A stretch of DNA of 64,000 bases, taken from NCBI GenBank assembly GCA_030390025.1, contig CM059430.1, positions 62,558,001-62,622,000 on the forward strand, written 5' to 3'. A model generated the notes under the pieces. The model saw only the letters and a program-made list of their open reading frames with translations. It was not told the origin of the DNA and made no database searches. Made by a program: the position numbers and the translations under genes. The stretch is from Squalus acanthias. Lineage: Eukaryota. Shown here piece by piece: positions 19,021-51,240 of this stretch. Numbering within the stretch: position 1 is the stretch's first letter; each line of letters opens with the position of its first letter.

Positions 19021-19081
19021 ATGTTGTCGACTGTGATGTTTCTTTTCCTGTTCCTGTCTCTCCCGGGGATCATTTGCGCAG
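19021..19081 (+). CDS. Gene 1 exon 1, signal peptide MLSTVMFLFLFLSLPGIICA
   Basis: ATG at 19021, hydrophobic core, phase-1 donor G|GTACC at 19082; conserved in paralog at 45553. Confidence 0.85.
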
Positions 19082-22000
19082 GTACCTGTTTATTCTCAAA
19101 TCGAGCTGTCTTAATAAAAAGCATACCTGAAGTAGTTACCACAGAAATTGAAAGAAATATGGTTAGTCGGTCTGTATTCTTTTAACGCATTTTCATTTCC
19201 ATGTAGAAATGCATTTTAAAGTGTTTGGTTCCGCATAGAATACAATTAAGCAAACTTTGAATATCTTTTCCAACAGCTGCTGCGGACTCTTCGATCAGCG
19301 TGCCTCAAAATCCCAGAAAAGTAACTAAATTAAGAGGGTCAAACATCACCTTCCAGTGCGTAGTCCCAGGGTCCCTTCGCAATTCAGGGATAGAAGTGTG
19401 TTGGAGGAAAGAGGGTGAGAATGAATATCTGCAAAGAGGAGCCGATAGCAGAAAAAGATTTACTCTGAAAGATAATGCAGTCAGTGTCTTTGAGTTACTG
19501 AACGTGACTTTTCGGGACTCTGGAATCTATCATTGCGCAGTGATCCATCAGGGAAGAATTATTGGAAATGGAACAGGATCACATCTAACTGTGAGCGGTA
19601 AGTGACCGGAGTGAGCGGGAACATCCAAATGTATCAAATTTAACAAGGATGATGTTTTGTCATTGTTTTATTGCACCGTCTTTGATATTATAAAACAATA
19701 TATTAATACATTTACAGTGAAACTCTGCACACAACTACTAATTATACGCATAATATGACACTTCATTTGCTGAGGTGTGTAAAATTCCAGCAATATTAAT
19801 CAGATTAAGTAACATGTTGCTGGATTCATCTCAAAACGTAATTTTTACATCAGACTTCTGAAGATGGAAGTTGCGGAACAAATTCCAAATATATTGATGA
19901 CTGGCTGAAAATATTTTCTATTAATGCACCACTCCCGCCATAAACACGGCTCTCTTGGGGAGACAGACAGACAGATCCAGAGTGACAAACAAACAGAAAG
20001 CGACTGAGGATACCATTGTTCATCCATATCTTATGATCATTATCTCCCCAGTAACCTGATTTTCTCCATTCTGTCTTCCGCAGCTGCCCCAACTCCATTG
20101 AAGTTTTCCCTGAGGACACCCGAGAGCAATTCATCTGCGTTTCTGACTCTTGTGTGTGAAACGGCTGAGTTTTACCCGGGCGATTTTATCCTCGTTTGGT
20201 ATAAAAATGGCGTCGAAACCGCAACTGGGATAAATGACACTAAACGGCAGAACACTGAGGGACTGTATGAAGTTTCCAGCTCTTTTGAAGAGACGCAGCC
20301 TGTGACGAACGGGGCTGTTTACATCTGTTTGGTATGTCATGCCTCCCTCCGGACTCCCGCCATTGCCATCCACACAGTTATCAATTGCGACCCAGGTACG
20401 AACGCAGGCCAAGAAGTGAGTTCAGCTACTGTTATATTCTGAAAGGGTATTTCATAGAGTTTGTTCATATCGATAAACATAAATTTAGTTTGAAAATACG
20501 CCCAGGAAACAGCAAAGCAAAGAGAAAATCAATGTTTCAATGTAAAATATTATTGACCGAGACCCGTTGTGAAACCGAAGGATTATTATCGCCCTTCACC
20601 CAGTAACTGCCTATTAAACCTCATCAGCTTCCAATTGTTAAAACAAATACGTGCAGGCTGTTTTTCTCTTCTATGCAATTATTTTACATTTCTTGTTTAT
20701 TACTAAACAATCAAACGTTTGCTCTTGTTAAACTGAATTCATTTTTCCCATTATCTGGTTCCTTGCACTAGTTGCAGGACTAGAAGCGACTGTTCGTTTG
20801 TCTGGTCTCGACCGTCTCTGAATCCCGCCTCTGATGGGCGATTCACGGTGGGGTCTTTTACACCGTCATTGTTCCCAAACACCAACTCATTTCCTGTGTT
20901 CCCAGGTCTCGCATTTCAGTTACGCAATGCCCTTCTTACCCCCCGCCCCCCGGTGCTGGATAAGCCGAGCAACCAAGAACACACAGACTAAAATTCCATT
21001 CTCTTCGTAAATCCCAGTACTCTCACACACGACAACATGATTAATCCGAGATCTTACCTTCTCCCATTCTGTTCAAGCTTACATTCCCCTCTAACTTTCA
21101 TGGTCATGATCCATTCCATTGGTACCTCCTGGCCACAACTCTGCCGACCCCACATCCAGCCTCACAAATATTCTGTCAAACATTATTTTCTGTCATATTT
21201 CTTTAATTAATTTATAACAATTATAAACAAGAGCTTATCACTTCTATCCGATTATATTTCCTCACCTGTTTATTATTAATACTTATTCAATTTATTTTGT
21301 TTAAGATCGTTGTATTCTTTACCATTGCCTGCTGTCCTTGTCCCAAGACTGTTACCAGGAGCTGCAGTCACGCTGTTTGCACTTGGGCTTCTTCCAATGC
21401 AGTTCCTGATCCTCATCCCCCTATCGGCTAATTCTACTGTAGAGATCCGAAATTAACCCCTGGCCAGCTTTTACCCCTCACCCGTCCATGTCATAACGGG
21501 TTTAATTGGAATATGTCTCATAAATCTCATTTAACCTGTGCCCGCAACCTGGCGACAGTACAGCCGGTTCGATACGTCATATTGTGAAGAACTCTTTGCC
21601 CCGAAGGGCAACAGTCAATGAACCATTGCCCGTTGATAGCCCTTACTATTCAGTGACCTTCTTACTGTAATAAACAAAGGTCAGGTAATTCAAAGGGTAT
21701 TCTTAACCGATTGCAGCAACCCAGAATTTTGTGCCCGCAACGAAGAAACTCTTGTGACGCATTTTCCTCCAATTTCCTCAAACTATATGTTAATAAATAA
21801 AAAACGTCAAGAACAAGTCTTTTGGTCATGGGAAATTGATCTCTCTCGTATTCTAACTCTCCTAAAACAGTGCTGTGAGATCCCTAACCCGGTAGTGCGT
21901 TGTGCAGATTAATCCCGAATGTCTCCTCCATCCGACGAATAAGTTACTTTAAAGATGATATCTAAAAGAAATAACATTTTGTATTTAATCTTTCTTATTG

Positions 22001-25000
22001 CCGATCTATACCGCGGAGTTACTGAAAGAAACTTCTTAGTTTAACCAATAAACTATCTTGAGGCCTATTCTTAGCTAACGCCCGCCATAACTTAAAGTTC
22101 CTATTAATCTTACAGGTAGTGGCGATAATTCACTTTATATCTTGGCTCCTGGGTGTGCGGTGGGTGGATTGGCGTTTCTGGTGCTAATGATTTTCATTGG
22201 GACGCGATGCCGACTGCAGAAGAATGAAGGTAAGATCAACTGTAAGCCCTTTATGTTCTTACAAAACCTCCGGGTTAGTGACAGTCTCTGGGTTACATTG
22301 GGGAAGGAGAAATCGATTTGGACTTAAAGATGAAAACAGTGTTATCTGTTTCAGGGAGCACGGATTGTTCCAAATACATTTGAAAATGCTGAATTGCTCA
22401 AAGAATCGTAATAAAAATGGAAATAATTGTTTGAATGTTTGCAACAGAAGTGCCCCCTTTGCAGCATAATAAATGACATGTGCCCTGACACACAATCACT
22501 TTCCAACCCATTCTGTTATGGATGCGCAACTAGTTTGATTGAAAGAGTCTGAGTCTCCGGCCGGGGAATGGTTGTACACAAAAGAACATAACAATAAGGA
22601 ACAGGAATAGGCCGGACTGCCCTTGAGCCTGCTCCATCATGCAATAAGATCATGGCTGATCTTCTACCTCAACGCCACTTTCCCGCCCTATCCCCATATC
22701 CCTTGATGTCCTTAATGCCCACAAAGATTGCCTTAGTTTCCGAGAAATAGCCAAAAAATGCACCATTGCTGATCGCTACAAGGGCTGGGATTTCAAACAC
22801 TGTCGGCACAATCCGGAATTGAAAATCATGTCCGGTTTTGTCTGACTCTAGAAATGTTTTTGCAACCACTGACATGGAAACTGAGTAAATGTTGCAATCT
22901 TTCAATATCATTAAATTTCATTCGTTTCCAGGTAAAGAAGAATGTGTAAGGGGAACGAACCGCCTTCAAGAGCTGGTACGTTCATTCATCCATCCCGGTA
23001 GACGGTTGAATTGTCAAGAAAGATTGGTATAATGGAAAGATTATATCATAGTCACGTCAGAACAGTTTAAGTCTACTGACTAAAAGTATTTGTCCGGTCT
23101 TAGTGAGTCATTCAAATCATGTTTAGAAATGTGCTTGGCACCCGGTGCGTTGCTGAAAAAAAAGTAAAATGGTAGAGAAGAAACCGGCTGTTTCGTTGAA
23201 AATGTACCTGGCTAATAATTGTTTATAGAATCATAAGAACATAAGAAATGGGGGCAGGAGTAGTCCATTCGGCCCTTCGAGCCTGCTCCGCCATTGAATA
23301 GAATTATGGCTGATCTTCTACCTCGAATCTACGCTCCTGCACTTTCTCTATTTCCCTTGGTTCCCTCAGTAGCCAAAAGTCTATCCATCTCTTTCTTTAA
23401 TATTCTCACCGACTGAGCATTCACAGCCCTCTGGGATGTAGAATTCCAAAGATTCACAACACTTTGAGTGAAGAAATTTCTCCTCATCTCAGTCCTAAAT
23501 GACCGACCCCTTATTCTGAGATTGTGAACCCTAGCTCTAGACTCCCCAGCCGGGGGAAACAGCCTCCCAGCATCTACCCTGCCAAGCAACTTCAAAATTT
23601 TAGACATTTCAATGAGATCACCTCTCATTCTTCTAAACTGTAGCGAATAAAGGTTTAGTCTACTAAATCTCTTCTCCTAGGATAATCCCCCCATCCCAGG
23701 AATTAGCCTGTTGAACCTTCATTACATTCCCTCTAAGGCAAAGATATCCTGCCTCAGATAAGGATTACTCCAGGTGTGGTCTCACCAAGATCATACATAA
23801 CTACAGTAAGACTTATTTCCTCTTATACACCAATCCTTTTGTAATTAAGGCTAATATACAATTTGTTTTCCTAATTGCTTGCTATACCTGCATGTTGACT
23901 TTCTATGATTCGTGTATAAGGAGACCCTGCTCCCTCCGAATACCAACATTTTCCAATCTCTCACTATTTAAAAAATATCCTGTTTTTCTATTTTTCCTCC
24001 CAAAGTTGATAACTTCACATTCCTGCACGTTATATTCCATCTGCCATGTACTTGCCCATCACTTAACCTGCCTATATACCTTTTCAGCCTCTTTGCGTCC
24101 TCCTCACAACATACTGTCCCATCGAGATTTTTATCTTAAGCAAACTTGAATAACTTACACTTGGTCCCCTCATCTAGGTCATTGATATAGATTGAAAATA
24201 GCTGAGGCCCAAACAATGATCCCTGAGATATCGCACTAGTTATAGCCTGCCACCCGAAAATTACCCATTTATTCCTACTGTCTGTTTTCTGTCCGTTAAC
24301 CAATCCTCAATCCACGCTAATATATTACCTCCAATCCCATGACCCCTAATTTTGTGTAATAACGTCTTGTATGGCACCTTATCGAATGTGTTTTGTAAAT
24401 TCAAATACACTACATTCACTGCTTCCCCCTTATCTACTGTAAGATTTGGATCACAGGTCACACACAGACTACCCAAAGGATCTTAGGTGTTGTAATGCAT
24501 TTTATTAAGGAGTGAAAGTTTAAGTTAAGTACAACACGCAATCAAGATAGACATAGTAGACATACGATCGGACAGACGGCTGGCGTGCGCGAACAGCTCT
24601 TCCCTTCCCTTCACCATCTGTGCTCAAAGCTCTTTAGATATCTCTTTTACTCTCTTTTTAGGGGTGGGCCAAGGGTAGATTATCAAAGATACAATCAACA
24701 ACCTTTCGAGCACACAAAGAGCAGACAACTAGTCTAGAAACAACGTCACTGCCACGGTGTAGAATGTTATAAATTCCACAAGGAACCAGGAACTAAGCAA
24801 ATTCTAAGCGTCTTTCCAGTTATTCTAAAACCAGTCTGAAGAAACTTTTTTGTCTCAAGTTATTTTTTCCAATTCATGATTTCTTACAACTCCCCACCTT
24901 GAGAAGGAAATATCCTATTGACTTCTCACAACCCACTTTGACTAATCTATATCGTTCTAAGTTATCGGCCCGCTGATAACATTCGTGCACAGGGATGCTG

Positions 25001-28000: not shown

Positions 28001-31000
28001 ATCTCTCCCTGAGAGGCCTGCAGGAGTCATAGGGAAGGTGGAAGGTCAGCTGTTTGCTCTGGTTGTTGATGCAACGCGACAACCTGTCGGGCTCCCTGGC
28101 CGATGGTCAAAGCTCCTAATACTGCTTCCATTCTTTCCAGTCATCGTTCTAGTGAGTCGAGGCCTGCCTGTCTAGGGGTGTTGTGACAATTGTTGCATTG
28201 AGAGGCATAGTGGCCTAGACGTTGGCAGAGATGAAGCACGCTGAAGTAATTTCCCCTGAAGTTCTAGATGGCCCTGACTTTTGCTTAGGCAGCAAGCCCT
28301 CAACAGCCGCTAAAGCAACCTTGGCATGTGTCACAGGGATATTGGCACGGGTCTGATCCCAAGCAGTCCTGGCATGGGCGCGTATTTGGTCCCACTCGAT
28401 GTTTTTAGAGACATAAATGTGCAGCGCATTACGGGCCAGCGGTTGGAGGTCGTTCAAAAAGAGGGTTCCTTCCACCCCACCTGGTGCACTGGAAGATGCC
28501 ATGAAGTTTATGCACAAAGGCATTCGGGCTTTCGGTAGGGCCCTGTTTGGTGTTAGCTAGAAGCTGGTGAAAATCAATGCTCTCTTTCCCTAGTGTTTGG
28601 CATAGTTCTAACTCAATCTCATCTATTGTGCTCCACCCCCACCCCACTCAGGATATCCAGGTCCATTTCTTGTTTTAATCCTGAGGAAGATGCTTCCAGG
28701 GGACCTCTTTGAGGCCGTCCCCTTCTAGTTCTGCTTGGTTGATTATAAATATCCTCCACCACTGCCTGACGTCGAGGGGGCTGATGTCCATGTCCACCAC
28801 CCCAGGTTAGCCTTTAGCTCCACCACTTCAACCGCAGTAAGGGACGGATGTGTGCTTGTGGTAATGTTTTCTGCCTATCTACTAATGGTGGTCGAGGAGG
28901 TTGCCTCGCCTTTCAGGTCTCGGTCAGCCTGGCGCCTGGTCTCGCATGGTGCCTTAGCTCGGGTGACCACACATACTGGTATCCTCTCCCCCGCCTCGCC
29001 ATCCTTGTAGGGTGGGGGCGGAGCAAATGGAACAGAGTGAGCAGAGGCAGTAGTGTCCCCAACTACGTTGTCACAGCAAAGGCCAGGATCTTCTGGGTTT
29101 GTCTTGGAGACAGCAGCCATTACTGCCCGTTGTTGGCCAATTTTTGCCTGCAGCTGTTGGATTTTTTCAAAGCACGGGCCATGGTCTGCTTGGGGGGAGG
29201 CAGTGGTTTGGCGCCAGTTTAATTCCCTTAACGCCCCACTTGCATCCTCTAACTCCTCACCCAATCTGGTGTTTTCTGCCTGTAGTTCAATATTCTGCTC
29301 AAGTATTTGAGCTAGTTTCTTTTATGTACATTACATTTTGTCATGAATCTTTTGCTCCCAGCGCGACTGGTTGCGGAGGGCAGAAAGCTTCTCTCGCCAA
29401 TCACTTCTTTCTCTCTGCATTTGGCCGACTTAAACTTTTAACTCTTTAATCTCCCTGTTTAACTTGGCAGCGCACAAGTGTGCCCCGTAGGCTAACCTCT
29501 ATCGGCCTCTCTTTATTTTAAGTTTGTTTTTTTGAACAACCTCAGAGAGTTTATCAAGGATGTAGTCATAGTCCCCGTTACCATCTTCTAAGATTTTTAG
29601 GAGGTCCGCTGCTGTGGACGTGCCGACTTTTTCTGTCAGGCTGTTCTCGATCGTATGCCAACGCCATTGTACCACTGGTTTTAACGTTTCCCAACTCTCT
29701 CCCTTTCCCTTCTTTCAGGGAGTCTTCTACTTAGTCTCAAGTGATGATCACGCGCGGTCGACCAAGTCCCTCTGGTCTCTGCAAGCAGAAACTTACAACT
29801 CTCAAAACTGTGATTCCACTTCTGACACCATTGTAACATTTGGATCACAGGACACGCACAGATTACCCAAACGGTCTTAGGAGTTGTAAGGCATTATTAA
29901 GAAGTGGCAGTTTCAGTTAAGTACAACACGCAATCAAGATAGACATAGTAGACATACGGCCGTGACAAGCAGCTGGTATCGGTCCCGATCAGACAGACGG
30001 CTGGCGTGTGCGAACAGCTCCTCCCTTCCGTTCATCGTCTGTGCTAAACGCTCTTTAAATATCTCTTTTATTCTCGTTTTATGGGTGGGCACAGGGTAGA
30101 TTATCAAAGATACAATCAAAAACCTTTCGAGTACACATACAGCAGACAGCTAGTCTGGAAACAAGGTCACCGCCATGGTGCAGAATTTTATATCGAAGAC
30201 TTTTTTGTGTGTCCTTCTGATGCTTGCATTGAACAGCAGTCCAGAGAACTTGCAAAACTACCAATTAATAATATTTCCAAGCGCCTGCTGCCCTTATCCT
30301 TCTCGGTGGAAGAGGTCGCAGGATTGGGAGGTGCTGTCGAACAAGCCTTGGCGAGTTGCTGCAGTGCATCTTGTAGAAGGTACACACTGCAGCCACGGTA
30401 CGCCGGTGGTGGAGGGAGCGAATGTTTAAGGTGGTGGATAGGGAGCCAATCAATTGGGCTGCTTTCTCCTGGATGGTGTCGAGCTTCTTGAGTCTTGTTG
30501 GAGCTGCACTCATCCAGGCAAGTGAAGAGTATTCCATCACACTCCTTACTTGTGCTTTGTAGATGGTGGAAAGGATTTGGGGAGTCAGGAGGTCAGACAC
30601 TCGCCGCAGAATACCTACACGCTGACCTGCTCTTGTTGCCACAGTATTTATCTGGCTGGTCCAGTTATGTTTCTGGACAATAGTGACCCACAGGATGTTG
30701 ATGGTGGGGGATTTGGCGATGGTAATGCCGTTGAATGTCAAGGGGCGCTGTGCAGACTCTCGCTTGTTGGAGATAGTCATTGCGTGGCACTTATGTGGCG
30801 CGAATGTTACCTGCCACTTATAAGCCCAAGCCTGAACGGCGTCCAGGTCTTGTTGCATGCAGGCATGGACTGCTTCATTATCTGAGGCGTTGTGAATGGC
30901 ACTGAACACCGTGCAGTCATCAGCGAACATCCCCATTTCTGACCTTATGATGGAGGGAAGTTCATTCATGAAGCAGCTGAAGATGGTTTGGCCTAAGGAC

Positions 31001-32478
31001 ACTGCCCTGAGGAACTCCTGCAGTAATGTCCTGGGGTTGGGATGTTTGACCCCAACCACCGCAACCATCTTCCTTTGTGCTAGGTATGACTCCAGCCAGT
31101 GGAGAGGTTTCCCCCCGATTCCCATTGACTTCAGTTTTACTAGGGATCCTTGATGCCACACTCGGTCATAAGCTGCCTTGATATCAAGGGCAGTCACTTG
31201 CACCTCACCTCGGGAATTCAGCTCCTTTGTCCATGTTTGGACCAAGGCTGTAATGAGGTCTGGAGCTGAGTGGTCCTGGCGGAACCCAAACTGAGCATTA
31301 GTGAGCAGGTTATTGTTGAGTAAGTGCCGCTTGATAGCACTGTCGATGACACTTTCCACAACTTTCAGAAGTACGATTTATTTACTAATGCCAGTTTCTT
31401 TAAGATCCTCATTCTAACTAGAACCTTGGTTCCCCACTATTTTGTCATGTTCCGTAAAGACAGATACAAAATATTTGTTTAATATCTGCCATTTCATCTA
31501 TTTTCCTGATTTATACTGTGTCCGACACTAGATCTACTGTTAGGGGACCGATACTCTACTCCCACCAGTGTTTTCTTTTCCTTGTTGTTTCATAGCTCCA
31601 ACAAAGTGAACCTTTCCCTCTACTGTCTTTATCCCATTCTTTATTATCAGGGCTACCGGACCTCCTTTTCCATTTTGCCTATCTCTTCTAAAAGTTAAGT
31701 ACCCTGCCATATTTAGTTCTTGGATTTGAAAAAAAAAGTTAGGTTCTAAAGCTGCCGCTGATTTAAACATTTCTGTAACACTGTGTTGCAGGATGAACAT
31801 TGACAGGTTTGAATATAAGTTACAGGGCCCACAGTGCCTTAACATTCGCTCTTATCTAAATATATATGAACTATGGTTTGTGCACTTGATATCTTGCCTC
31901 GGCCAATCCGTTAAATGTTTGATCAGCGGTACGTAAACTGGTGAAGGCAATGAACTAGCCACATAACCAAACTCTTTCTTTCTGACCCATGCAGGAAGCA
32001 GCGGCTGAGACCGTGCATTATGCTGCATTAGATTTAAACAGAAGCCGGAAAACTCCAAGACGGGAAATTGAAGCGGAGAGAACCGTGTACGCTCAGGTAG
32101 GACTGAGTAACAGATCAGAGAAACAAAGATCATCAGTGTAACATCAACATTCATGCGCTAGCGTGGGGCATATGTTTGCGCTGACTTTGACCGTGTGTTG
32201 TATCGAAGGATATTTGCGTGTCCTTCTAATGCCTGCTTTGAGCAGCAGTCCAGACAACTTGCAAAACGACCAATTAACAATATTTCCAAACATTGGCTTT
32301 ACAGACCGAACAAGGGACAGCCCGTGACAAACTGACGTACGCAGCTATAGCATTGACTGGCTCAGAGAAAACGGGGAAATGCAAAAATAACGAACGAAGC
32401 ACAGAGTATGCCCAGCTGAAGACCAAAAAACAAAGAGGAGTAACAGAGGCTGTCTACACAGAAGCAAGAATCAATTAG
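19021..32478 (+). CDS. Gene 1: spliced VJ-C1-TM receptor with ITIM/ITSM-type tail (NKp30/SIRP-like, predicted inhibitory); exons 19021-19081, 19277-19597, 20084-20395, 22116-22229, 22932-22975, 31995-32096, 32305-32478; 375 aa
   Basis: All introns are GT..AG with compatible phases (1,1,1,1,0,0). The summed exons are 1128 nt, open to TAG at 32476-32478. Domain order is signal peptide, V-set, C1-set, hydrophobic TM, tyrosine motifs. Confidence 0.85.
19277..19597 (+). CDS. Gene 1 exon 2, Ig V-set domain with germline-joined J-like G strand
   Basis: Acceptor ttttccaacag; ITFQC...W...DSGIYHC V-set motifs; GNGTGSHLTV diglycine J-like motif; donor G|GTAAGT. Confidence 0.92.
20084..20395 (+). CDS. 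Gene 1 exon 3, Ig C1-set domain
   Basis: Acceptor ctgtcttccgcag; LTLVC..FYP...W.KNG...EGLY.VSS...YICLVCHASL are C1-set hallmarks; donor CAG|GTACG. Confidence 0.92.
22116..22229 (+). CDS. Gene 1 exon 4, transmembrane (no charged residue)
   Basis: Acceptor atcttacag; SLYILAPGCAVGGLAFLVLMIFIGTRCR; donor AAG|GTAAGA. Confidence 0.88.
22932..22975 (+). CDS. Gene 1 exon 5, short cytoplasmic exon (GKEECVRGTNRLQEL)
   Basis: Acceptor ttcgtttccag, donor CTG|GTACG; homologous exon in gene 2 at 49953. Confidence 0.75.
23231..24437 (-). mobile_element. CR1 3' half in gene 1 intron 5 (5' remnant at ~31360-31730)
   Basis: cataagaacataagaa tail; ORFs 23329..23628 and 24261..24476 are RT-like. Confidence 0.85.
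24438..24888 (-). repeat. 3' LTR (451 bp)
   Basis: TGTAAGA...TCTTACA inverted ends; polypurine tract aaggtggggagt (minus strand) adjacent at 24889-24900. Confidence 0.88.
29813..29830 (-). other. Primer-binding site complementary to the tRNA-Leu 3' end
   Basis: Minus strand TGGTGTCAGAAGTGGAAT vs tRNA-Leu(CAA) 3' ...ATCCCACTTCTGACACCA, one mismatch. Confidence 0.8.
29832..30192 (-). repeat. 5' LTR (truncated)
   Basis: Homologous to 24438-24770; PBS immediately adjacent. Confidence 0.85.
30281..31360 (-). mobile_element. Family-B LINE RT fragment
   Basis: ORF 30265..31359: QFGFR, LDIKAAYDRVWH, MFADDC, YKAQVRSVMEYS. Confidence 0.88.
31995..32096 (+). CDS. Gene 1 exon 6, cytoplasmic, VHYAAL (ITIM) and TVYAQ
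   Basis: Acceptor ccatgcag, phase 0; EAAAETVHYAALDLNRSRKTPRREIEAERTVYAQ; donor CAG|GTAGG. Confidence 0.82.
32305..32478 (+). CDS. Gene 1 exon 7, terminal cytoplasmic exon, LTYAAI / TEYAQL / AVYTEA
   Basis: Acceptor ttggctttacag; same frame as ORF 32293..32478; TAG stop. Confidence 0.82.
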   Translation, partial: TEQGTARDKLTYAAIALTGSEKTGKCKNNERSTEYAQLKTKKQRGVTEAVYTEARIN

Positions 32479-32809
32479 TAATACATTTTAGCTGCAGAAG
32501 TTAGTTTTTTGGTGTTTACTGATCGCATGCCAAGCCATATCAACTGCACGCCGATGTCTACCATGCGATACCATCCTTCCGAGAGGTAACGCATTCTGGT
32601 GATGTATCAGAGAATGCAGTTTATAGTTATTACTTACTGTTCAATAATTTGATGTATTTTATTTCAGCCACTTTTAAGAACAAAGTAACTTTCCTGACAT
32701 ACTTTAATGTTAAATTTGTATTATTTACCTGTTTGCAAATATCTACGCTTTCGATTAAAATAATACGCTAATTGCCTCGCTGTACACAATTATCATCATA
32801 CATGAATTC

Positions 32810-32815
32810 AATAAA
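32810..32815 (+). terminator. Polyadenylation signal AATAAA of gene 1
   Basis: AATAAA ~330 nt after the stop; same context conserved downstream of gene 2 (51241). Confidence 0.6.
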
Positions 32816-38702: not shown

Positions 38703-40039
38703 AAACCGGTAAATATATTTTATGTAACTACAGATATTAAATGCACGTATTTACTGGTTTATATAACTGTGTTATGTGATTGAAACAAAGTGATTGATTT
38801 ATATCCCCTGCATTGTGTGAATGAACGTCATTTTATTGGCTATTTAATTTGTTAGTTCAATTAGAAATTTTCAGGAATCAATTGAAGCAATTGCTTCAAG
38901 AACTCTCAGGAATGGCAGCGTGCAACTCTGTGATATTGACATTTAATGCCAGAGGTTACTTTGATCCTGATAGTAAACGTACAAAATATGCTTGGCCAGT
39001 TCCTGCTGGCAGTGGCCAGAGAACACCATGGGCCAGTTTGGAACCAATTCTCAATTTCACTGACACAACACACAGGATAGCAGGCGGGGGAGTGAAAAAA
39101 ATCTATGGGAAGGATTTGTGACTAGGAAACAGGGAGAACTATGCAACCTTCTTCAAAAATAGCTTGGGATCTTTTACTTCTACCTAAATAGGTAGATTGA
39201 TCCTTCAATAGAATTACATAGAATATACAGCACACAAACAGGCCATTCGCCCCAACCAGTCCATGCCGGCGTTTATGCACCACTCAAGCCTCCTCCCACC
39301 TTTCCTCCAAAAACTCTATCAGCATAATGCTCTATTCCCTTCTCCCTCATATGCGTATCGAGCCGCCCTAAAATGCAGCTATACTCAGTTAATATTAAAG
39401 GCGGCAGTTCATTCAAGGCAGAATTCCATCAGTACCATATATTATATTAGTGCACTTTTCCTGTCAACTTTACCATTTCTACTGTAAGTTTTGTCCGCGG
39501 TCCTCGCATTAGAGGCATTGCAGTGCCGGCTCTGGCAGTGGGTGCAATTGCAGGCTAACGGTTCAGCAGAAAATTTTATAGAAATTAATATGGGAATTTA
39601 CAGGACAGAATGTATATGAATTTAAATGGATATAGAGCTAAGTCTGCATGCAATGGTCCAAATATCACCCAGCCTCTAACCCTGCTTCACCTGATGATTA
39701 AACTGCAATTTGATTCGCCTTTACCAGCACTATGGGAGATAGACTGCATTTTAAAAAATTTAATTTAACTTTTAATAAAATGAGTGATGCAGTCTTACAC
39801 AATAAAAGCAGAGCCTTTGACATATGATAATATGAGCTCCAACAGGATTTTAAGCATTTGTGCTGAGGGTTACATCATTTTGTGGAATATTTCAGCACTT
39901 CCTGTTGCTGGTCAGTACTTATCCTACACACAAAACGGACGAGGCCGTGAATTTAAGTTACATTTTCCTTTTGATTTTGCGATGCCTGTTTGGAAGTTTT
40001 CTTCTATTTTAAAGGCGTTATAAAATACAGATTTTTGTT

Positions 40040-43000: not shown

Positions 43001-44340
43001 GGAAGTGGTATCAAGTCACTTAGAAAATCATAATATGATTAGGCAGAGTCAACATGGATGTATGAAAGGAAAATCGTGTTTCACAAATTCATTAGAGTTT
43101 TTTGAGGATGTAACTAGCAGGGTAGATAAAGGGGAACGAGCGGATGTAGTATATTTGGATTTCCAAAAGGTATTCGGTAAGGTGACACATAAAAGGTTAT
43201 TACACAAGATAAGGGCTCATGGGGTTTGGTGTAATAAAGTAGCATGGATAGAGGACTGGTTAATGGACATAAAGCAGAGAGTAGGGATACACGATTTAAG
43301 CTTGGCAGGCTGTAACTAGCGGGGTGCCTCAAGGATCACAGCTGGGGCCTGAGCCATGTACAATCTATATTAATGACCTAGATGATTAGACTGAGTGTAA
43401 TGTATCCAAGCTTGCTGATGATCCAAAGCTAGGTTGGACAGTAAGCTGTGTGGAGAACACAAACAGTACGCAAAGTGATATAGGTAGACTAAGTGAGTGG
43501 GCAGCAAGGTGGCAGATGGAGTATAATGTAGGGAAATGTGAGGTTATTCACTTTGGTAGGAAGAATAGAAAAACATAATATTTTTTAACATGAGAAACAT
43601 TTAAATGTTGGTTTTCAGAGAGATTTGTGTGACCTCGTTCAAAAAATACAGAAAGCTAGCATGCAGGTACAGCAAGCAATAAGGAAGGCAAATGGCCTGT
43701 TGGCCTTTATTGCAAGTGGGTTGGTGTAGATGAGTAAGAATGTCTTGCTACAATTGTATCGGGCCTCGGTGAGACCACACCTGCAGTATTGTGCACAGTT
43801 TTGTTTCTTTATCTAAGGAAGGATATACTTGCCTTGGAGGCAGTTCAACGAAGGTTCACTGGATTGATTCCTGGGATGAGAGGGCTGTCCTATGATGAGA
43901 GATTGTGTAGAATGGGACTATACTCTTTGGAGTTTAGAAGAATGAAAGGTGATCTCATTGAAACATACAGATTGTGAAGGGGATAGACAGGGTAGATGCT
44001 GAGAGGTGGTTTCCCCTGGCACGAGTGTCTAGAACTAGGGGGCATAGTCTCAGGACAAGAGGTAGGCCACTTAAGACCGAGATTTCTTCACTCAAAGGGT
44101 TGTGAATCTTTGGAATTCTCTGCCCCAGAGGACTGTGGATGCTGAGTCTTTGATCATATTTAAGGCTGAGATAGATAGATTATTGGACTCCATGTGAATC
44201 AAGTGATCTGGAGATCGGACGGGAAAGTGGAGTTGAGAACAATAATCAACCATGATCTTGTTGAATGGTGGAGCAGGCTCGAGGGACCGTATGGCCTACT
44301 CCTGCTCCTATTTCTGATGTTCTTGTGTTCTTATGTTCTG
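40040..44340 (+). mobile_element. Copy-B of the degenerate CR1 with the same nested MITE and CR1 fragment
   Basis: Colinear with 13540-17875. Confidence 0.85.
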
Positions 44341-45552
44341 GTTTCGATTGGAAACATTCGGTACTCTCCACACTTGATCACAAACATCAGATAAACTGAA
44401 GGGTGAGTGATTATATAAATCAATCAAAAATTGTTGGTATTAATTTGTGGCGTACTGTACTACGCACGAAGCCTTACCTACACTTTCTAAGTGCGGCGTC
44501 CGTGGACAGCTGCAATGTGAGAACGCTTTAGGAGACCCTTCAAATAACGGCGAAGATTCCCATGCACTCGAATGAGAAGAATATTACCCTTTACTTTACG
44601 GAGCATATTTTTGGCCATTGAGCTCTTGACCTGGAAGCTCACTAGACGCCCTTTTTAAAAATCTAGCGAATATATCCGCTATCAAACCAATTTGCACAGT
44701 TTCATCGTGGCTACCAACATTTTCCTCCAAACATTTTATGCAGGACGCGCTGATAGCAGGAAATTGCAATTGCAAAGAAGCCCTGACCTCAAACACACAT
44801 CGGCAACTCTCTGAAGGAATCATCAAAGCTCTATTTCCTAAATATTCAATAAGGTTATTTTAAGGTGAAAATAAACGCCATCGTTATCATTGACGGTTCT
44901 GATTCAGTTCACTGTGTTCGGAATAGCATCAGGTCTCCCGAGATACAACCCATCACAATGAATGCGATCTCCCCAGTATCACGTGAAATGTGCAGCAATG
45001 CTTGGAATTATAGTAGAACATTCTCTATACACAACTGCTGTGTTAATCAGTCATTTTCTCACCTTCAGTATTTATCATAAAATATTGCTACTGTTATTTA
45101 AGAACTAATTATTAACAATTTATAAATGTTCCCAGTTTGTCCCGCTTTGACGTCTGTAGTCTATTGTGTGACGTTAACAGCAGCGTACAGCCTAAAGGAA
45201 GTGTAAGAGTATTTGCCTCACGAGATTCACTACAAGGAATGTGCACATTCGACATCTTCATTTGGGAGAAACCAACACTGGCTCAGCGATCGGTGGTAAA
45301 TTCTGTATTTGGAATTTTGATATTTTTCTTTCCAAAGCCATTGTTGACCGTGACACAGCTGATCCCAATGGCTGCTTAAGAGCAGAACGGTCATCAAATT
45401 TCACTTCACAAACGAAACCCATTTTTAACCCACAGACACAGGATGTCAAACGTCATTACGAAGCATTTCGGTTTAAATAATCAGCAAACCCTTCTTTCAG
45501 TGTCAAACACACGGTCTGTGCCGTCAGTGATCAGTTGAATCTTTTGCTCGGA

Positions 45553-45613
45553 ATGTTGTCGACTGTGATATTCCTTTTCCTGTTGCTGTCTCTCCCGGGG
45601 ATCATTTACACAG
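45553..45613 (+). CDS. Gene 2 exon 1, signal peptide MLSTVIFLFLLLSLPGIIYT
   Basis: ATG 45553, donor CAG|GTACC; 61 nt like gene 1. Confidence 0.82.
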
Positions 45614-48600
45614 GTACCTGTTTATTCTCAAATCGATCTGTCTTAATTAAAAACATACCTGAAATAGTTACCACACAAATTGAATGAAATATAATTAGTC
45701 GGTCTGTATTCTTCTAACGCTTTTTCATTTCCATGTAGAAATGCATTTTAAAGTGTTTGGTTCCGCATAGAATACAATTAAGCAAACTTTGAATATATTT
45801 TCTAACAGCTGCTGCGGACTCTTCGATCAGCGTGTCTCAAACTCCCAGAAAAGTAATGATATTAAGGGGGACAAACATCACCTTCCAGTGCTTAGTCCCC
45901 GAGTCCCTTCGCAATTCAGGGATAGAAGTGCGTTGGAGGAAAGAGGTTGAGAATGAATATCTGCAAAGACGAGCCGATAGCAGAAAAAGATTTACTCTGA
46001 AAGATAATGCAGTCGGTTTATTTGAGTTACTGAACGCGACTATCCGGGACTCTGGAATGTATCACTGCGCAGTGATCCGTCAGGGAAGAATTATTGGAAA
46101 AGGAACAGGATCACATCTAACTGTGAGCGGTAAGTGACGGGAGAGAGCGGGAATTTCCAAATGTATCAAATGTAACAAGGATGATGTTTTGTCATTGTTT
46201 TATTGCACCGTCTTTGATATTATAAAACATGATATTAATACATTTACAGTGAAACTCTGCACACAACTACTAATTATACGGCATAATATGACGCTTCATT
46301 TGCTGAGTTGTGTAAAATTCCAGCAATATTAACCAGATTAAGTAACATGTTACTCGATTCATCTCAAAACGTAATTTTTACATCAGACTTCTGAAGATGG
46401 AAGTTGCGGAACAAATTCCAAATATATTGATGACTGGCTGAAAATCTTTTCTATTAATGCACCGCTCCCGCCATAAACACGGCTCTCTTGGGGAGTCAGA
46501 CAGACAGACCCAGAGTTAAAAACAAACAGAGAGCGACTGAGGATACCATTGTTCTTCCATATCTTATGTTTAATATCGCCCCAGTAACCTGATTTTCTCC
46601 ATTCTCTGTTCCACAGCTGCCCCAACTCCATTGAAGATTTCCCCCAGGACACCCGAAAGCATTTCATCTGCGTTTCTGACTCTTGTGTGTGACACGGCTG
46701 AGTTTTACCCGGGCGATTTAACCCTCGTTTGGTATAAAAATGGCGTCGAAACCGCAACTGGGATAAATGACACTAAACGGCAGAACACTGAGGGACTGTA
46801 TGAAGTTTCCAGCCCTTTTGAAGAGACGCAGTCTGTGCCTAATGGGGATGTTTACATCTGTTTGGTAGCTCATGTCTCCCTCCGGACTCCCGCCATTGCC
46901 AGCTACACAGTTACCAATTGCGACCCATGTACGAATGGAACAGGTGAGGTCAGCTGCAGTTATATACTGAAAAGTGTACTTCATATAGTTTATTCATATT
47001 GATAATCATAAAGATTGTTTAAAAATAAACTCCCAGGAAATATCAAAGCAAAGAGAAAATTAATGTTTCAATGTTAAATCTTGTTGACACTTAACCATAG
47101 TATAGCCGAATGATTATTATCGTCCTCCACACAGCTCTCTGTTAAACCGCATCAGCTTCCAATTGTTAAAACAAAAATGATCAGGCGATGTACCTCTTTT
47201 ATACAATTATTTTCATTTCTTGCTGATTACTCAAAACTCATTTGTTTCCCTTTATCTGGTTCCTTACAACCAGGACCAAGAGCGGCACTCGTTTTTCTGG
47301 TTTCGAGCGTCTCCTAGTGGGGCTCCTGAGCCCGGCCTCTGATGGGCGATTCACTGTGAGGGGTTTTACACTGTCAATTACTCCCAAACACAAGCTCATG
47401 TCCTGTGTTCCCAGGTCTCACATTTCAGTTACGCAATTGCCTTATACCCCCGCCCCCCCCGCCCCCCCGCCCCCCAGTGCTGGATAAGCCGAGCAACCAA
47501 GAACACACGCTAAAATCCCATCAAGTTTCCAAATCCCAACACTCCCACACAAGACAACATGATTAATGTTAGGTCGTACCTTCTTCCATTCTGTTCAAGA
47601 CTACCTTCCCCTCCAACTTTCGTCCTGGCCACAGCTCTGCCTACACCCCTTCCAGCCAGACAGTCTCCCCATCCCTTTTTCTGTCTCAAATCTCTATCTT
47701 GCATCACCTCTCCAAAAGCCTCTTTCACCTAGTACATGTTGCCTTCCATCTTCCCACATCTCTAAGTACTTAAACAATGGGAAGAGATAGATTTAGAATA
47801 TATTAAAAATGGAACTTGTGTGGGAGCCAATACACAACATTTGGAACTGCATAAGGAGAGAAATAATAGAGATTTAATTCATTAGAAGGGAAACAGACAA
47901 AATGCAAAACATTGCTGTATAGACATTTACATAGACCGTTACAGACAGCAGAATGAATAAAGTGTAAGACAAACATACAAATAGAAAGATTAAGAAAAAA
48001 GAGGTGTAAGACAAAGATAGAGAGGATGGCACAAAAGTAATTCGCAAGTGGGAAAGGAGCAAAGATACAATTTCAAGAAGAGCAACACCACAGGAGACTG
48101 ATGATATTATAACCCCCGGAGTCACCTACTTGTTATTGAATAGCCTATGCTCAAATGTACTGTACCGTTGGAAATCCATATATAATGCTTATTTCTCATG
48201 GCTTTGCGCATGGCGAGTAAGAGGTTGTCCTGCTGCGTAGGAAGGAGTGTGGTTTTCCTGGGGATGTAAGTCGGAGCCGTGGACACCTGAATCGAAAGAA
48301 TTTGGAAATCTTTTCATAAGGGAGTGAAATTAAGGAAGTCTTTTTGAATGGTTGCTGGAGAACACGGACAACTCATGGGAATATAAACGAACACATAAAA
48401 TCCATGTTTGAATGATTAGAGGAACCCAATGTGTTGTAAAACCGGGTATATCGTCTGCCTTACAAACATTCTCAGTAAAACATTATTAAGCCTTCAAGTT
48501 CCTGTATTTGATACATAACACAGGTTCATCTTTGTTATCCGATTATATTTCATATTTTGCTGATTGTTACTCTTTGTTTTGTTTCCATGTTAAAATGTTT

Positions 48601-49987
48601 ATTCCTTACCATTATCTGGTTTTGCTTCACCTGGACGATTACCAGGAGCTACGATCAAGTTGTCTGCTCTTTGGTTTCTCCCAATGCAGTTCCCGATCCT
48701 GATCCGCTTTTTGCCGATTCTGAATGAAGAGTTCTGAAATTAACACTTTGGCCTACTTCTAATCTTGGCGCAGCGGTCTGAAGTGGGATCTGTCTCATAT
48801 ATTTAATTTAAACTGTTCTTACTGTCTGACTGCTTTTCAGCCGGTTACATCATTTTTTAAGAACTGCTAACCTGGGCAGACAATAATTAATAAACCATCT
48901 CCTTCACTATTCAGTGACATTCTTACTTCAATAAAGTATAGACGTGTGAACTGATGTTTTAACCGATTTCTGCAATTCGGCATTTTGTAGAGGGAATGGC
49001 GAAACAATTGTCACCGAATTGCCTGGGATTACATCAGACAGTAAGTAAAGAACATAAGAAAAGTTTACGATAAGAACAAGCCATTCGTTCCAGGGAAACA
49101 TTCCGCTCGTATATTACCTCTCCTACACCAATCTCTCTTCGCAGTTAATGCCATAATTGTCTCATCCATTAGATGCATAAGTCTCTCCCAATATTACATC
49201 TAAAAACGAATAACAGTTTTTTAATTAAAACATCCTTATTGCTGTTGGATACTACGGAGTTACTAAAAACATCAATAGTTCAACCAATGAACTCTGCTGT
49301 GGCCTCGTTTACGAAACACTCGCCACTATGTACAACTTAATATATTTGCTCCTATTATTCTTGCAGATAGCGTCGGTATGTCCCCTTACTACTCGGGTTT
49401 TAGATATGCGGTGGATGGATTAGCGTTCCTGCTCCTCCTGATCATCATTGGGATGCACTGCCAGTTGCAGATTAATAAAGGTAAGATCTATTGTAAGCAT
49501 TTGATTTTCATACAATACTTCAGCGAGCTCCGGGGGACGGGGGAGTGAGTGTTTCCGAGTAGCGCAGAGGAAGGAGAACTAAATTATGACTTAAAGTTGA
49601 AGGCAGGCTGCTATCTGATTCCAAACAGCAACAGATTCAGCTCTTTAAAACGCAGAAATACTCGCAGAATTTAAATTAAAAGGATCTGATTATCTGGATA
49701 TTTGCAACAGAAATTTCCACTTCGCAGCATGATGAATGGAACGTATTTTGAATAGGTGTGAGACTCCAGCCCGGAATGGTTTTACAGCATTCCTGGTCGC
49801 TGCAGTGAGATTTCAAACACTGACAGCACAATCTGAATCTGAAAACCATGTTCGGCATTATAGCGACTCCAGAAAGGTCTTTGCAAGCATTGATATGCAA
49901 ATTCAGTAAATATTTCAATCATGCATTATGATTAAATTGCATTGCTTCACAGGGAAAAATTGCCGTAAAGGGCCCGAACTGGCGTGA
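45553..49987 (+). CDS. Gene 2: paralogous VJ-C1-TM receptor with TM Arg/Asp and short tyrosine-free tail (predicted activating); exons 45553-45613, 45809-46129, 46617-46943 (or 46928), 49367-49480, 49953-49987; ~285 aa
   Basis: Intact GT..AG phase-1 junctions, open frame to TGA 49985-49987; each exon homologous to gene 1. Confidence 0.8.
45809..46129 (+). CDS. Gene 2 exon 2, V(J) domain
   Basis: ITFQC..W..DSGMYHC..GKGTGSHLTV; 321 nt, canonical splice sites. Confidence 0.9.
46617..46943 (+). CDS. Gene 2 exon 3, C1-set domain
   Basis: LTLVC..FYP..W.KNG..YICLVAHVSL; the orthologous donor at 46929 is weak (T|GTACG), while a strong in-frame donor CAG|GTGAGG lies at 46944. Confidence 0.85.
49367..49480 (+). 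CDS. Gene 2 exon 4, transmembrane with Arg and Asp (SGFRYAVDGLAFLLLLIIIGMHC)
   Basis: Acceptor ttcttgcag, donor AAG|GTAAGA, 114 nt like gene 1. Confidence 0.82.
49953..49987 (+). CDS. Gene 2 exon 5, truncated tail GKNCRKGPELA*
   Basis: Acceptor ttgcttcacag; 2 nt shorter than the gene 1 exon (frameshift), TGA stop, donor GT changed to AT. Confidence 0.7.
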
Positions 49988-51050: not shown

Positions 51051-51240
51051 ATGTAATTGAATGTGGGTGTAATAGTTTGTTATTGTCTTAAATATTTGAG
51101 GAATTTTCATTTAATTATTTGTAAGAAAATGATCTTGCCTTGCACATTTTTGATCAATCTATAGTATTTCACAGATGACAAATACCTGCAATGATACACT
51201 ATTTGTTTTGCTGCATCTAATTATTATCATACATAAAGTG

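What the first reader, a model, noticed from the sequence alone, without database searches (positions are those of the whole stretch)
19021..49987. Paired inhibitory/activating, non-rearranging antigen-receptor-like (VJ-C1) immune receptors
Seen: two tandem genes each encode leader-V(J)-C1-TM. Gene 1 has an uncharged TM and five cytoplasmic tyrosine motifs. Gene 2 has an Arg at the outer TM edge, a ~20-residue tyrosine-free tail and decayed ITIM exons. Known: this logic defines paired receptor families (SIRP-alpha/beta, KIR, LILR, teleost NITR), and a single V+C1 ectodomain is the architecture of a TCR or Ig light chain. Inference: a chondrichthyan innate paired-receptor family built on an antigen-receptor-like scaffold, possibly undescribed as a paired system. 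The ORF track misses it because it is split across exons.
Basis: partly seen in the sequence, partly recalled or inferred. Interest (0 to 1): 0.9.

Follow-up and report, generated by a model that had tools for sequence, protein, structure and literature searches.

The report
Paired shark VJ-C1 receptor genes
Two neighbouring shark genes encode near-identical antibody-like surface receptors, one with an "off-switch" tail and one that lost that tail and carries a charged membrane anchor; they belong to a large gene family that is machine-annotated but apparently unstudied.

Summary
Gene 1 (19021-32478, seven coding exons, all AG/GT) encodes leader, a one-exon V with J-like motif, one C1-set domain, an uncharged TM and a five-tyrosine tail. 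Gene 2 (45553-49987, five exons) has the same ectodomain (84-85% aa). Its TM exon carries Arg and Asp, a stop leaves a 19-residue tyrosine-free tail, and relics of two ITIM exons lie downstream.

The genes are about 93% identical from 20 kb upstream to the end of the C1 exon, and 65-80% beyond it. Gene 2's TM type recurs in a Scyliorhinus canicula protein (23/27 aa; clade support 100/98), so it is an older, trans-species lineage.

Both genes belong to a multigene family seen only in Chondrichthyes. NCBI names it inconsistently (SIRP-alpha-like, SIRP-beta-1-like, tapasin-related-like, Ig-lambda-like). SIRP membership fails on domain number and V similarity. PRARP could not be tested.

RNA-like contigs confirm the leader-V and V-C1 junctions, but only for a close paralogue. 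Gene 2's own expression is not shown, and ectodomain dN/dS is about 1. "Paired receptor" is therefore well supported as sequence logic and unproven as function.

This scan had already noted similar genes on other pieces of the same genome. I found no paper describing the family.

The parts
19021..19081 (+). Gene 1 leader exon (ATG; ends in phase 1: split leader)
   Evidence: The homologous junction of gene 2 is seen spliced in RNA-like contigs.
19277..19597 (+). Gene 1 V exon with an in-exon J-like motif (..GNGTGSHLTVS), germline-joined
   Evidence: Pfam V-set 5.5e-10. phmmer best hit 1.7e-32. No CACAGTG/CACTGTG heptamer.
20084..20395 (+). Gene 1 C1-set exon (YICLVCH hallmark; stalk Cys in ..NCDP)
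   Evidence: Pfam C1-set 1.4e-9. PDB hits: Ig lambda C, UrIg2, TAPBPR, MHC II beta, SIRP-gamma.
22116..22229 (+). Gene 1 stalk/TM exon; TM uncharged
   Evidence: 28/35 aa identical to Heptranchias P0165.
22932..22975 (+). Gene 1 cytoplasmic exon 1 (44 nt; brings phase 1 to phase 0)
   Evidence: Same peptide type in P0160 and P0165.
31995..32096 (+). Gene 1 cytoplasmic exon 2 (VHYAAL ITIM; TVYAQ)
   Evidence: 20/33 identical to P0165.
32305..32478 (+). Gene 1 cytoplasmic exon 3 (LTYAAI ITIM, TEYAQL, AVYTEA; stop TAG)
   Evidence: 44/53 identical to P0165. Poly(A) signals at 32754 and 32810.
45553..45613 (+). Gene 2 leader exon
   Evidence: The joint 45613|45809 (printed as 45609>45805, cut +4) is in contigs of runs X1 and X3.
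45809..46129 (+). Gene 2 V(J) exon (92.8% nt, 89/106 aa identical to gene 1)
46617..46928 (+). Gene 2 C1 exon (93.3% nt identical to gene 1; donor weakened CAG|gt > CAT|gt)
   Evidence: The V-C1 joint 46129|46617-8 is in contigs of X1, X2 and X3.
49367..49480 (+). Gene 2 stalk/TM exon of a different lineage (..GFRYAVDGLAFLLLLIIIG..: Arg, and Asp four residues later)
   Evidence: 68.4% nt identical to gene 1. 23/27 aa identical to S. canicula P0005. Clade support 100/98.
49953..49987 (+). Gene 2 last coding piece: frameshifted homologue of gene 1's 44-nt exon, stop TGA, old donor GT>AT
50654..50754 (+). Relic of ITIM exon 2 in gene 2 (acceptor AG>GG, stop, Y>F, donor lost)
50961..51056 (+). Relic of ITIM exon 3 in gene 2 (18-nt and further deletions; approximate ends)
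   Evidence: AATAAA at 51241.
352..20395 (.). Homogenised tract, copy 1 (copy 2 is 33607-46928): 91-94% identical, falling to 76-79% just after the C1 exon
30268..31359 (-). LINE-type reverse-transcriptase fragment inside gene 1's 9-kb intron (not part of the gene)
   Evidence: Pfam RVT_1 1.2e-22. Gene 2 lacks this ~8.5-kb insert.

Best explanation
The window holds two adjacent members of a large, chondrichthyan-wide family of non-rearranging type I receptors. The family design is split leader, one-exon VJ-type V domain, one C1-set domain, stalk/TM and tail.

Gene 1 is an inhibitory member. Its tail carries two ITIMs, each followed by a TxYAQ-type tyrosine. Once phosphorylated, these would recruit SH2 phosphatases of the SHP-1/2 type (inferred).

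Gene 2 belongs to an older short-tailed lineage that arose from an inhibitory gene:
- its TM exon acquired an Arg near the outer leaflet;
- a frameshift and stop in the first cytoplasmic exon cut the tail to 19 residues;
- the ITIM exons behind it decayed.

Later the whole 5' half (20 kb of upstream DNA, leader, V, C1) was homogenised between the two genes, by unequal crossing-over or long-tract conversion. Both now display nearly the same ligand-binding face with opposite signalling ends.

The most likely working mode of gene 2 is pairing of its TM Arg with an Asp-bearing ITAM adaptor of the FcR-gamma / CD3-zeta / DAP12 type (inferred, not shown). This particular copy may be losing function.
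For: Shown:
- Exon models with canonical splice sites and CDS lengths that are multiples of 3.
- V-set and C1-set Pfam matches above threshold.
- Leader-V and V-C1 junctions seen spliced in contigs of three runs.
- Homologues with the same design in Callorhinchus, Heptranchias, Heterodontus, Mustelus, Scyliorhinus, Pristis, Mobula, Amblyraja and others.
- The tail is better conserved than the ectodomain against Heptranchias P0165: 44/53 in the last exon versus 57-64% in V and C1.
- The identity step sits at the end of the C1 exon: at least 92% before it, 76-79% after it, 68% in the TM exon.
- TM exon identities: gene 2 to S. canicula P0005 23/27; gene 1 to gene 2 18/37. Gene 2 and P0005 form a clade with support 100/98, nested in the inhibitory TM clade (97/93).
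- P0005 also has a very short tail.
- The frameshift, stop, dead donor and decayed ITIM exons of gene 2.
- Amino-acid differences between the genes are split 15:15 as to which copy keeps the family-majority residue. Gene 2's ectodomain is therefore not decaying faster than gene 1's.
- Other family members also combine a short tail with an Arg in the TM.
Against: - No contig covered gene 2's TM exon in any of the 4 runs laid. No long contig reached 99% identity, so gene 2's transcription is not shown.
- The spliced contigs come from a third sequence. Of the 31 listed differences from gene 2 that lie in exons, 16 are gene-1-like and 15 are neither. That transcript continues after C1 into sequence absent from the window.
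- dN/dS between the genes is 1.10 (V) and 1.30 (C1), and exons are no better conserved than introns. This fits neutrality as well as diversifying selection.
- Gene 2 lost a Gly present in 22 of 22 relatives, and the Asn of GNGTG present in 19 of 24.
- Its C1 donor is weakened at -1.
- The Asp four residues after the Arg is unique to gene 2; P0005 has Gly there. It could neutralise the Arg.
- No adaptor, phosphatase or ligand was tested.
Confidence: 0.65

Rival explanations
1. Gene 2 is a dying copy, not an activating partner. An inhibitory gene was broken by a frameshift. Its 5' half looks intact only because recombination with gene 1 refreshed it recently.
For: - dN/dS is about 1 in V and C1.
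- An invariant Gly and the J-motif Asn are lost.
- The C1 donor is weakened, the cytoplasmic exon donor is dead, and the ITIM exons are decayed.
- An Asp was introduced next to the Arg.
- No gene-2-specific RNA was seen.
Against: - The TM exon lies outside the homogenised tract, yet it keeps its ORF and splice sites and is 23/27 identical to a S. canicula protein of the same design.
- Derived changes are split 15:15 between the two genes, not skewed to gene 2.
- There are no stops or indels in 633 nt of ectodomain exons.
Confidence: 0.35
2. Gene 2 is a signalling-silent decoy or adhesion form, comparable to SIRP-gamma. It would bind or sequester the same ligand without an adaptor.
For: The tail is short and motif-free. 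The Arg-Asp pair at i and i+4 could form an internal salt bridge and need no partner.
Against: In the S. canicula relative the Arg stands alone, with Gly at the Asp position. A lone basic TM residue usually demands an acidic partner. That last statement is established knowledge of DAP12/FcR-gamma-coupled receptors and was not tested here.
Confidence: 0.12
3. The two genes encode the two chains of one disulphide-linked, TCR-like heterodimer rather than two alternative receptors.
For: Both carry a membrane-proximal Cys (..NCDP) just after the C1 domain. The architecture is V-C1-stalk-TM. The profile of the family matches Ig chains and UrIg2 as well as SIRP-alpha.
Against: - The chains are 84-85% identical, so a homodimer would be equally possible.
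- The stalk Cys is rare in the family: 3 clear cases (P0163, P0167, P0171) among 85 proteins scanned.
Confidence: 0.07
4. These are germline-joined shark Ig light-chain clusters misread as receptors.
For: Shark Ig lambda is entirely VJ-joined in the germline (PMC12227049, section 15). The best PDB match of the C1 exon is a lambda constant domain. NCBI names some relatives 'Ig lambda-1 light chain-like'.
Against: - The C1 exon ends in a phase-1 donor, not a stop.
- TM and ITIM exons follow, and they are conserved in 22 aligned homologues.
- The V exon's best hits are this family, not light chains.
Confidence: 0.01

Closest known systems
SIRP family (SIRP-alpha / beta / gamma)
   Same: - VJ-type V plus C1-set domains on a type I receptor.
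- An inhibitory member with a four-tyrosine tail. The alternation ITIM...TxYA...ITIM...TEYA and its spacing resemble my recollection of SIRP-alpha; no call tested this.
- A short-tailed member with a basic TM residue.
- NCBI's automatic names point to this family.
- SIRP-alpha (2wng) ranks 4th of 10653 PDB matches to the family profile.
   Different: - One C1 domain instead of two (SIRP definition from PMC12975943 passages).
- The V exon alone finds no SIRP chain among its 61 PDB hits.
- It is 31% identical to a bovid SIRP-beta-1-like V, which ranks 115th.
- Synteny and CD47 binding were not tested.
PRARP (Fu et al. 2019, J Immunol; non-rearranging IgSF genes of chicken)
   Same: As I recall the paper: non-rearranging V(J)-C1-TM genes in tandem, proposed as relics of an antigen-receptor precursor. 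It is listed with SIRP, NKp30, NITR, CD79 and CD8 as joined-VJ IgSF genes (PMC11599192 passage; PMC10751288 passage).
   Different: This could not be compared. The paper is not held and no PRARP sequence was available from any tool. Orthology stays open and is the main threat to novelty.
UrIg / UrIg2 (elasmobranch non-rearranging VJ genes)
   Same: Split leader, one-exon VJ and C1-type domains, in cartilaginous fish. UrIg2 (9dmx) is the 2nd best PDB match both for the C1 exon and for the family profile.
   Different: Nurse-shark UrIg2 has nine C domains. UrIg is described as an antibody-like molecule, and no ITIM is mentioned (PMC12227049, section 7 read in full; search for 'ITIM' gave 0 occurrences). 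Here there is one C1, a TM and an ITIM tail.
Teleost NITR
   Same: A multigene family with a V domain bearing a J-like motif, and both inhibitory (ITIM) and activating (charged TM) members. NITR-like teleost proteins appear among weaker V hits (P0098 from Colossoma).
   Different: The membrane-proximal domain here is a true C1-set domain. The hits are weak (E about 1e-9).
TCR / Ig light chains
   Same: V(J)+C1 ectodomain, split leader and membrane-proximal Cys. TCR chains also have basic residues in the TM.
   Different: No RSS and no separate J segment. There is an ITIM tail, and the genes are germline-encoded only.

Membership tests
SIRP family | Ectodomain of one V-set and two C1-set domains | tested here: not met
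   There is one C1 exon between V and TM in each gene, and only two C1 matches in the whole window. The 22 aligned homologues also have V plus one C1. Definition taken from PMC12975943 passages.
SIRP family | V domain specifically related to SIRP V (D1) | tested here: not met
   0 SIRP chains among 61 PDB hits at E<=0.01. 31% identity to a Bos mutus SIRP-beta-1-like V, which ranks 115th of the 150 listed.
SIRP family | Inhibitory member with cytoplasmic ITIM tyrosines that recruit SHP-1/2 | tested here: inconclusive
   The motifs are present (VHYAAL, LTYAAI, TEYAQL). Binding cannot be tested. No SIRP-alpha tail sequence was available from a tool, and the tail exon has no PDB match.
SIRP family | Activating member: basic TM residue, very short tail, DAP12 coupling | tested here: inconclusive
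   Arg in the TM and a 19-residue tail, but an Asp lies four residues on. Adaptor coupling cannot be tested.
SIRP family | CD47 binding; conserved synteny with the SIRP locus | not tested
The window holds only the two genes and repeats.
PRARP | Non-rearranging V(J)-C1-TM architecture (definition recalled) | tested here: met
   This shows likeness of design only.
PRARP | Sequence orthology to chicken PRARP genes | not testable with these tools
   The paper is not held and no sequence was obtainable. Searches found only citations.
Paired inhibitory/activating receptor family (generic) | Closely similar ectodomains encoded by neighbouring genes | tested here: met
   89/106 (V) and 88/103 (C1) aa identical. 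The genes lie 26.5 kb apart in tandem.
Paired inhibitory/activating receptor family (generic) | One partner has ITIMs; the other has a charged TM residue and a short tail | tested here: met
   This is at sequence level only.
Paired inhibitory/activating receptor family (generic) | Both partners are expressed and signal in opposite directions | tested here: inconclusive
   Spliced contigs exist only for a 92-97% identical relative. Gene 2's TM exon is uncovered.
Rearranging antigen receptors (Ig/TCR) | V and J segments separated and flanked by RSS | tested here: not met
   V and the J-like motif lie in one open exon, with no heptamer in or just after it.
UrIg / UrIg2 | VJ exon followed by several C domains | tested here: not met
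   There is a single C1 exon. UrIg2 has nine C domains (PMC12227049, section 7).
NITR | V domain (plus I-type domain) without a C1-set domain | tested here: not met
   The second domain is C1-set, above Pfam's threshold, in both genes.

The most novel reading that the evidence does not exclude
The family is a surviving membrane-bound branch of the pre-RAG antigen-receptor lineage. These would be TCR-chain-like molecules (VJ, one C1, stalk Cys, TM) that pair as disulphide-linked dimers. Its Arg-TM forms would couple to CD3-zeta / FcR-gamma-type adaptors as TCRs do. On that reading the TCR's signalling architecture, and an inhibitory mirror of it, existed on a germline-encoded receptor. Unchecked notes of this scan place relatives inside Ig light-chain arrays of the same genome, which would fit a common origin.
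Probability: 0.1. Interest if true: 0.9.

Novelty: new member of a known kind. Interest (0 to 1): 0.5.

Why it matters
Cartilaginous fish are the oldest living lineage with Ig, TCR and MHC.

- A large family of germline-joined VJ-C1 receptors with both inhibitory and Arg-TM forms shows that paired-receptor logic on an antigen-receptor-like scaffold was in place at the base of jawed vertebrates.
- The window offers an unusually legible record of how an inhibitory gene turns into a short-tailed one: frameshift, dead donor, fossil ITIM exons. It also shows ectodomains later being kept alike by recombination.
- It gives concrete genes for testing whether SIRP, PRARP and this family share one origin, and how they relate to UrIg/UrIg2 and the rearranging receptors.

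The value is limited. The gene models are already public under automatic names, the logic is well known from SIRP, KIR, LILR and NITR, and function is untested.

Tried and rejected
1. Reaching non-chondrichthyan relatives.
- All three homologous-protein searches returned only chondrichthyan family members, plus weak multi-V reptile proteins in the first. The queries were P0007, the 22-sequence alignment and the tail of P0165.
- The protein atlas gave one unnamed cluster at 0.82, below its own lead threshold.
- The tail exon has no PDB match.

2. Literature. Searches found no paper describing this family.
- One search ('PRARP') returned mostly unrelated acronyms.
- Fu 2019 is not held: one search found only a citation and no fetch was tried. 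Two fetches failed: Flajnik 2023 (PMC10530332) and Ohta 2019 (PMC6761025). What I say of their content is recalled.
- Supplements were not opened. Those of PMC12227049 and PMC10751288 list gene models and could name this family.

3. RNA evidence.
- The look-up of sequencing runs gave 6 runs, none on record as RNA, each holding 0.08-0.11 of the sampled words.
- The one read-laying run (gene 2, 45500-51499, min_likeness 90) showed spliced joints for a close relative only.
- X5's contigs run unspliced through intron 1 and may be DNA.

4. I looked in the window for the next exon of the paralogue transcript and for the upstream piece of an X2 contig. Both gave 0 matches.

5. Rejected readings:
- Ig light-chain cluster: TM and ITIM exons follow the C1 exon.
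- A direct TM-to-ITIM-exon splice: the phases do not fit (1 against 0). This led to the 44-nt exon at 22932-22975.

6. No V or C1 phylogeny against SIRP, PRARP, NKp30, TCR and IgL was built, because the tools gave me no sequences of most of these.

7. The spliced model was never joined. Exons were translated, searched and aligned one by one, and only exon lengths were summed.

Full report
WHAT IS THERE.

The window contains a tandem segmental repeat. Positions 352-21099 match 33607-47621 at about 91-93%. Each copy ends in the 5' half of a gene.

Reading the open frames and splice sites gives two gene models.
- Gene 1 has seven coding exons: 19021-19081, 19277-19597, 20084-20395, 22116-22229, 22932-22975, 31995-32096 and 32305-32478. 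The CDS is 1128 nt.
- Gene 2 has five: 45553-45613, 45809-46129, 46617-46928, 49367-49480 and 49953-49987. The CDS is 843 nt.

Every acceptor is AG and every donor is GT. The leader, V, C1 and TM exons all end in phase 1.

Pfam calls exon 2 V-set (5.5e-10 and 3.2e-8) and exon 3 C1-set (1.4e-9 and 1.1e-11), above the curated cut-offs. tblastn finds just these two V and two C1 copies in 64 kb.

The V exon runs straight through a J-like G-x-G-S-x-L-T-V motif. It holds no RSS heptamer, so the V is germline-joined.

Each exon was handled on its own.

THE TWO SIGNALLING ENDS.

Gene 1's TM is uncharged. A direct splice from its TM exon (phase 1) to the ITIM exon at 31995 (phase 0) is impossible. A 44-nt exon at 22932-22975 restores the frame. 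It encodes the same short peptide type as in Heterodontus P0160 and Heptranchias P0165.

The last two exons carry VHYAAL, TVYAQ, LTYAAI, TEYAQL and AVYTEA. That is five tyrosines. Two fit the ITIM consensus and one is ITSM-like. The 9-kb intron in front of them holds LINE debris (RVT_1, 1.2e-22) that gene 2 lacks.

Gene 2's TM exon reads ..GFRYAVDGLAFLLLLIIIG... It has an Arg, and an Asp where gene 1 has Gly.

Its copy of the 44-nt exon has a net 2-nt loss. It runs into TGA at 49985-49987, and its donor is now AT. This leaves a 19-residue tail without tyrosine.

Downstream lie recognisable relics of both ITIM exons.
- Relic A (50654-50754) has acceptor AG>GG, a stop, Tyr>Phe and a lost donor.
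- Relic B (~50961-51056) has an 18-nt deletion that removes the LTY motif, and further deletions.

MOSAIC HISTORY.

| Segment | Identity, gene 1 vs gene 2 |
|---|---|
| Leader exon | 91.8% |
| V exon | 92.8% |
| C1 exon | 93.3% |
| Introns 1 and 2 | 93.8-94.4% |
| 1 kb of 5' flank | 92.9% |
| 100-nt windows right after the C1 exon | 76-79% |
| TM exon | 68.4% |

Further on, identity is 64-75%.

At protein level the two TM exons share 18/37 residues. Gene 2's TM exon shares 23/27 with P0005, a 287-aa Scyliorhinus canicula protein that also ends a few residues after the TM. Gene 1's TM exon shares 28/35 with Heptranchias P0165. The ectodomains behave the opposite way: they are 84-85% alike within the window and only 50-64% alike to those proteins.

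An ML tree of 33 TM segments puts gene 2 with P0005 at 100/98 support. That pair sits inside a 97/93 clade that holds gene 1 and inhibitory TMs of three other sharks. The alignment has only 37 columns, so other forks are weak.

So the Arg-type TM is a derived, trans-species lineage, and the ectodomains were homogenised recently. This is the pattern known from paired receptor families.

THE FAMILY.

The V exon finds 275 proteins at E<=1e-3 and 70 at E<=1e-10 among 1.84 billion representatives.

Source names were seen as follows.
- Looked up: 10 of 10 and 10 of 10 family-like hits are chondrichthyan.
- Of 33 hits to P0007, 22 are chondrichthyan, 1 is an unnamed Logan protein and 10 are weak multi-V reptile proteins.
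- All 30 hits to the family profile are chondrichthyan.
- Of the 10 looked up, the three family members are chondrichthyan. The seven weaker non-family hits are from reptiles, teleosts and a bovid.

NCBI's automatic names disagree with each other: PTPNS1 (SIRP-alpha)-like, SIRP-beta-1-like, tapasin-related-like, CD276 homolog, H-2 class II beta-like, Ig lambda-1-like and NCR3LG1-like. That argues against a clear orthologue.

In a rough motif screen of 51 family-like models:
- 25 have ITIM/ITSM tails;
- 13 have no TM in the model;
- 8 have short or motif-free tails with an uncharged TM;
- 5 have short tails with an Arg in the TM.

That screen missed P0005 and several '..R....IIVDH' TMs that can be seen. 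So a second Arg-TM design exists, in Callorhinchus and Heptranchias among others (names).

The tail is under constraint. Gene 1's last exon is 44/53 identical to P0165, against 57-64% for V and C1.

WHAT IT IS NOT.

The family profile hits 10653 PDB chains at E<=1e-6. The order is a lambda-bearing Ig entry, UrIg2 (3.9e-35), a construct called CT3, and then SIRP-alpha 2wng (5e-31).

The C1 exon alone ranks Ig lambda C, UrIg2, TAPBPR and MHC II beta ahead of SIRP-gamma. The V exon alone finds no SIRP chain among 61 hits and is 31% identical to a bovid SIRP-beta-like V.

With one C1 instead of two, the SIRP membership test fails on two features, although the tail design is SIRP-alpha-like. That comparison rests on my recollection of SIRP-alpha's four tyrosines.

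UrIg2 has many C domains and no ITIM is mentioned (PMC12227049: section 7 read; 'ITIM' 0 occurrences). NITRs lack a C1 domain. PRARP could not be tested.

IS GENE 2 ALIVE?

For:
- an intact ORF in all five exons, including the TM exon that lies outside the homogenised tract;
- a TM type conserved across species;
- the 32 amino-acid differences in V and C1 are split 15:15 (2 ties) as to which gene keeps the residue commoner in 20-24 relatives, so gene 2 is not drifting faster than gene 1.

Against:
- dN/dS of 1.10 (V) and 1.30 (C1), from 34 non-synonymous and 9 synonymous changes, with exons no better kept than introns;
- loss of a Gly found in 22 of 22 relatives, and of the Asn in GNGTG (19 of 24);
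- a C1 donor weakened from CAG|gt to CAT|gt;
- a new Asp four residues after the Arg.

RNA.

Six runs hold 0.08-0.11 of the sampled words, and none is on record as RNA. Four were laid on 45500-51499 at 90% likeness.
- Contigs of X1 and X3 skip 45613|45809. The tool prints this as 45609>45805, GT..AG, cut +4.
- Contigs of X1, X2 and X3 skip 46129|46617-8.
- These are exactly the predicted junctions. Illumina adapter at contig ends fits cDNA libraries.

These contigs are only 92-97% identical to gene 2. Of the 31 listed differences that lie in exons, 16 match gene 1 and 15 match neither gene. The 1219-nt X2 contig continues after C1 into sequence that is not in the window. They therefore come from a third family member, or from a related species.

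Gene 2's TM exon has no cover in any run. X2 has two contigs collinear with 50551-50683 and 50696-51026, at 91% and 96%, with no joint between the two relics. This fits the fossil exons now being unspliced 3'UTR of a gene-2-like transcript, but it does not prove it. X5's contigs run unspliced through intron 1 and may be DNA.

VERDICT.

The finding is real and well read. It is a neighbouring inhibitory / short-tailed Arg-TM pair from a chondrichthyan-wide VJ-C1 receptor family, with a clear fossil record of the conversion and later homogenisation of the ectodomain.

It works like SIRP-alpha/beta or other paired receptors, but it fails the SIRP membership test. Its relation to PRARP is untested.

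I found no paper on it in eight searches of the held library. Against that, the models are public under automatic names, and this scan's own unchecked notes list many similar genes on other pieces of the genome, some reportedly inside Ig light-chain arrays.

Synteny, the catshark locus and a fold comparison are therefore missing.

Noticed in passing
window 20384-20395 and 46917-46928: Both genes have a membrane-proximal Cys (..NCDP) right after the C1 domain. A stalk Cys is clear in only 3 (P0163, P0167, P0171) of 85 family-like proteins scanned. It could make disulphide-linked dimers.
   Followed up: partly
proteins P0169, P0176, P0150, P0029, P0031, P0057: The family has a second short-tailed design, with an Arg early in the TM and a D/E-H pair at its inner end ('..R....IIVDH'). 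It is present in Callorhinchus and Heptranchias. NCBI names these 'class II beta-like'.
   Followed up: partly
window 20396-20443 and 46929-47002: If the C1 donor is not used, the frame stays open for 15 (gene 1) or 24 (gene 2) more codons before a stop. Intron retention could give secreted V-C1 forms, especially from gene 2's weakened donor.
   Followed up: no
window 50551-51226: RNA-like contigs of run X2 lie collinear over the fossil ITIM exons at 91-96% identity without a splice. One contig has 20 foreign letters just before a pyrimidine-tract-AG at about 50552. This may be an unrecognised acceptor.
   Followed up: partly
window 23233-31756: An insert of about 8.5 kb in gene 1's intron, absent from gene 2. 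It holds a LINE-type RT fragment (30268-31359, minus strand, RVT_1 1.2e-22) and a GC-rich stretch at 28-30 kb.
   Followed up: partly
window 47446-47476: Many 31-letter contigs at very high summed depth (about 100-1800) in all four runs. This is a common repeat, in a proline-codon-rich stretch between C1 and TM of gene 2.
   Followed up: no
proteins P0004, P0047, P0048, P0101, P0107, P0111, P0118, P0148: Some family models go from V straight to the TM or ITIM tail without a C1 hallmark. These could be exon-skipped isoforms, V-only genes or poor gene models.
   Followed up: no
window 19399 region (V..EVCWRK) and 20334 region (C1..LVCH): Gene 1 has two extra cysteines at positions where 0 of 22 and 0 of 23 relatives have Cys.
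   Followed up: no
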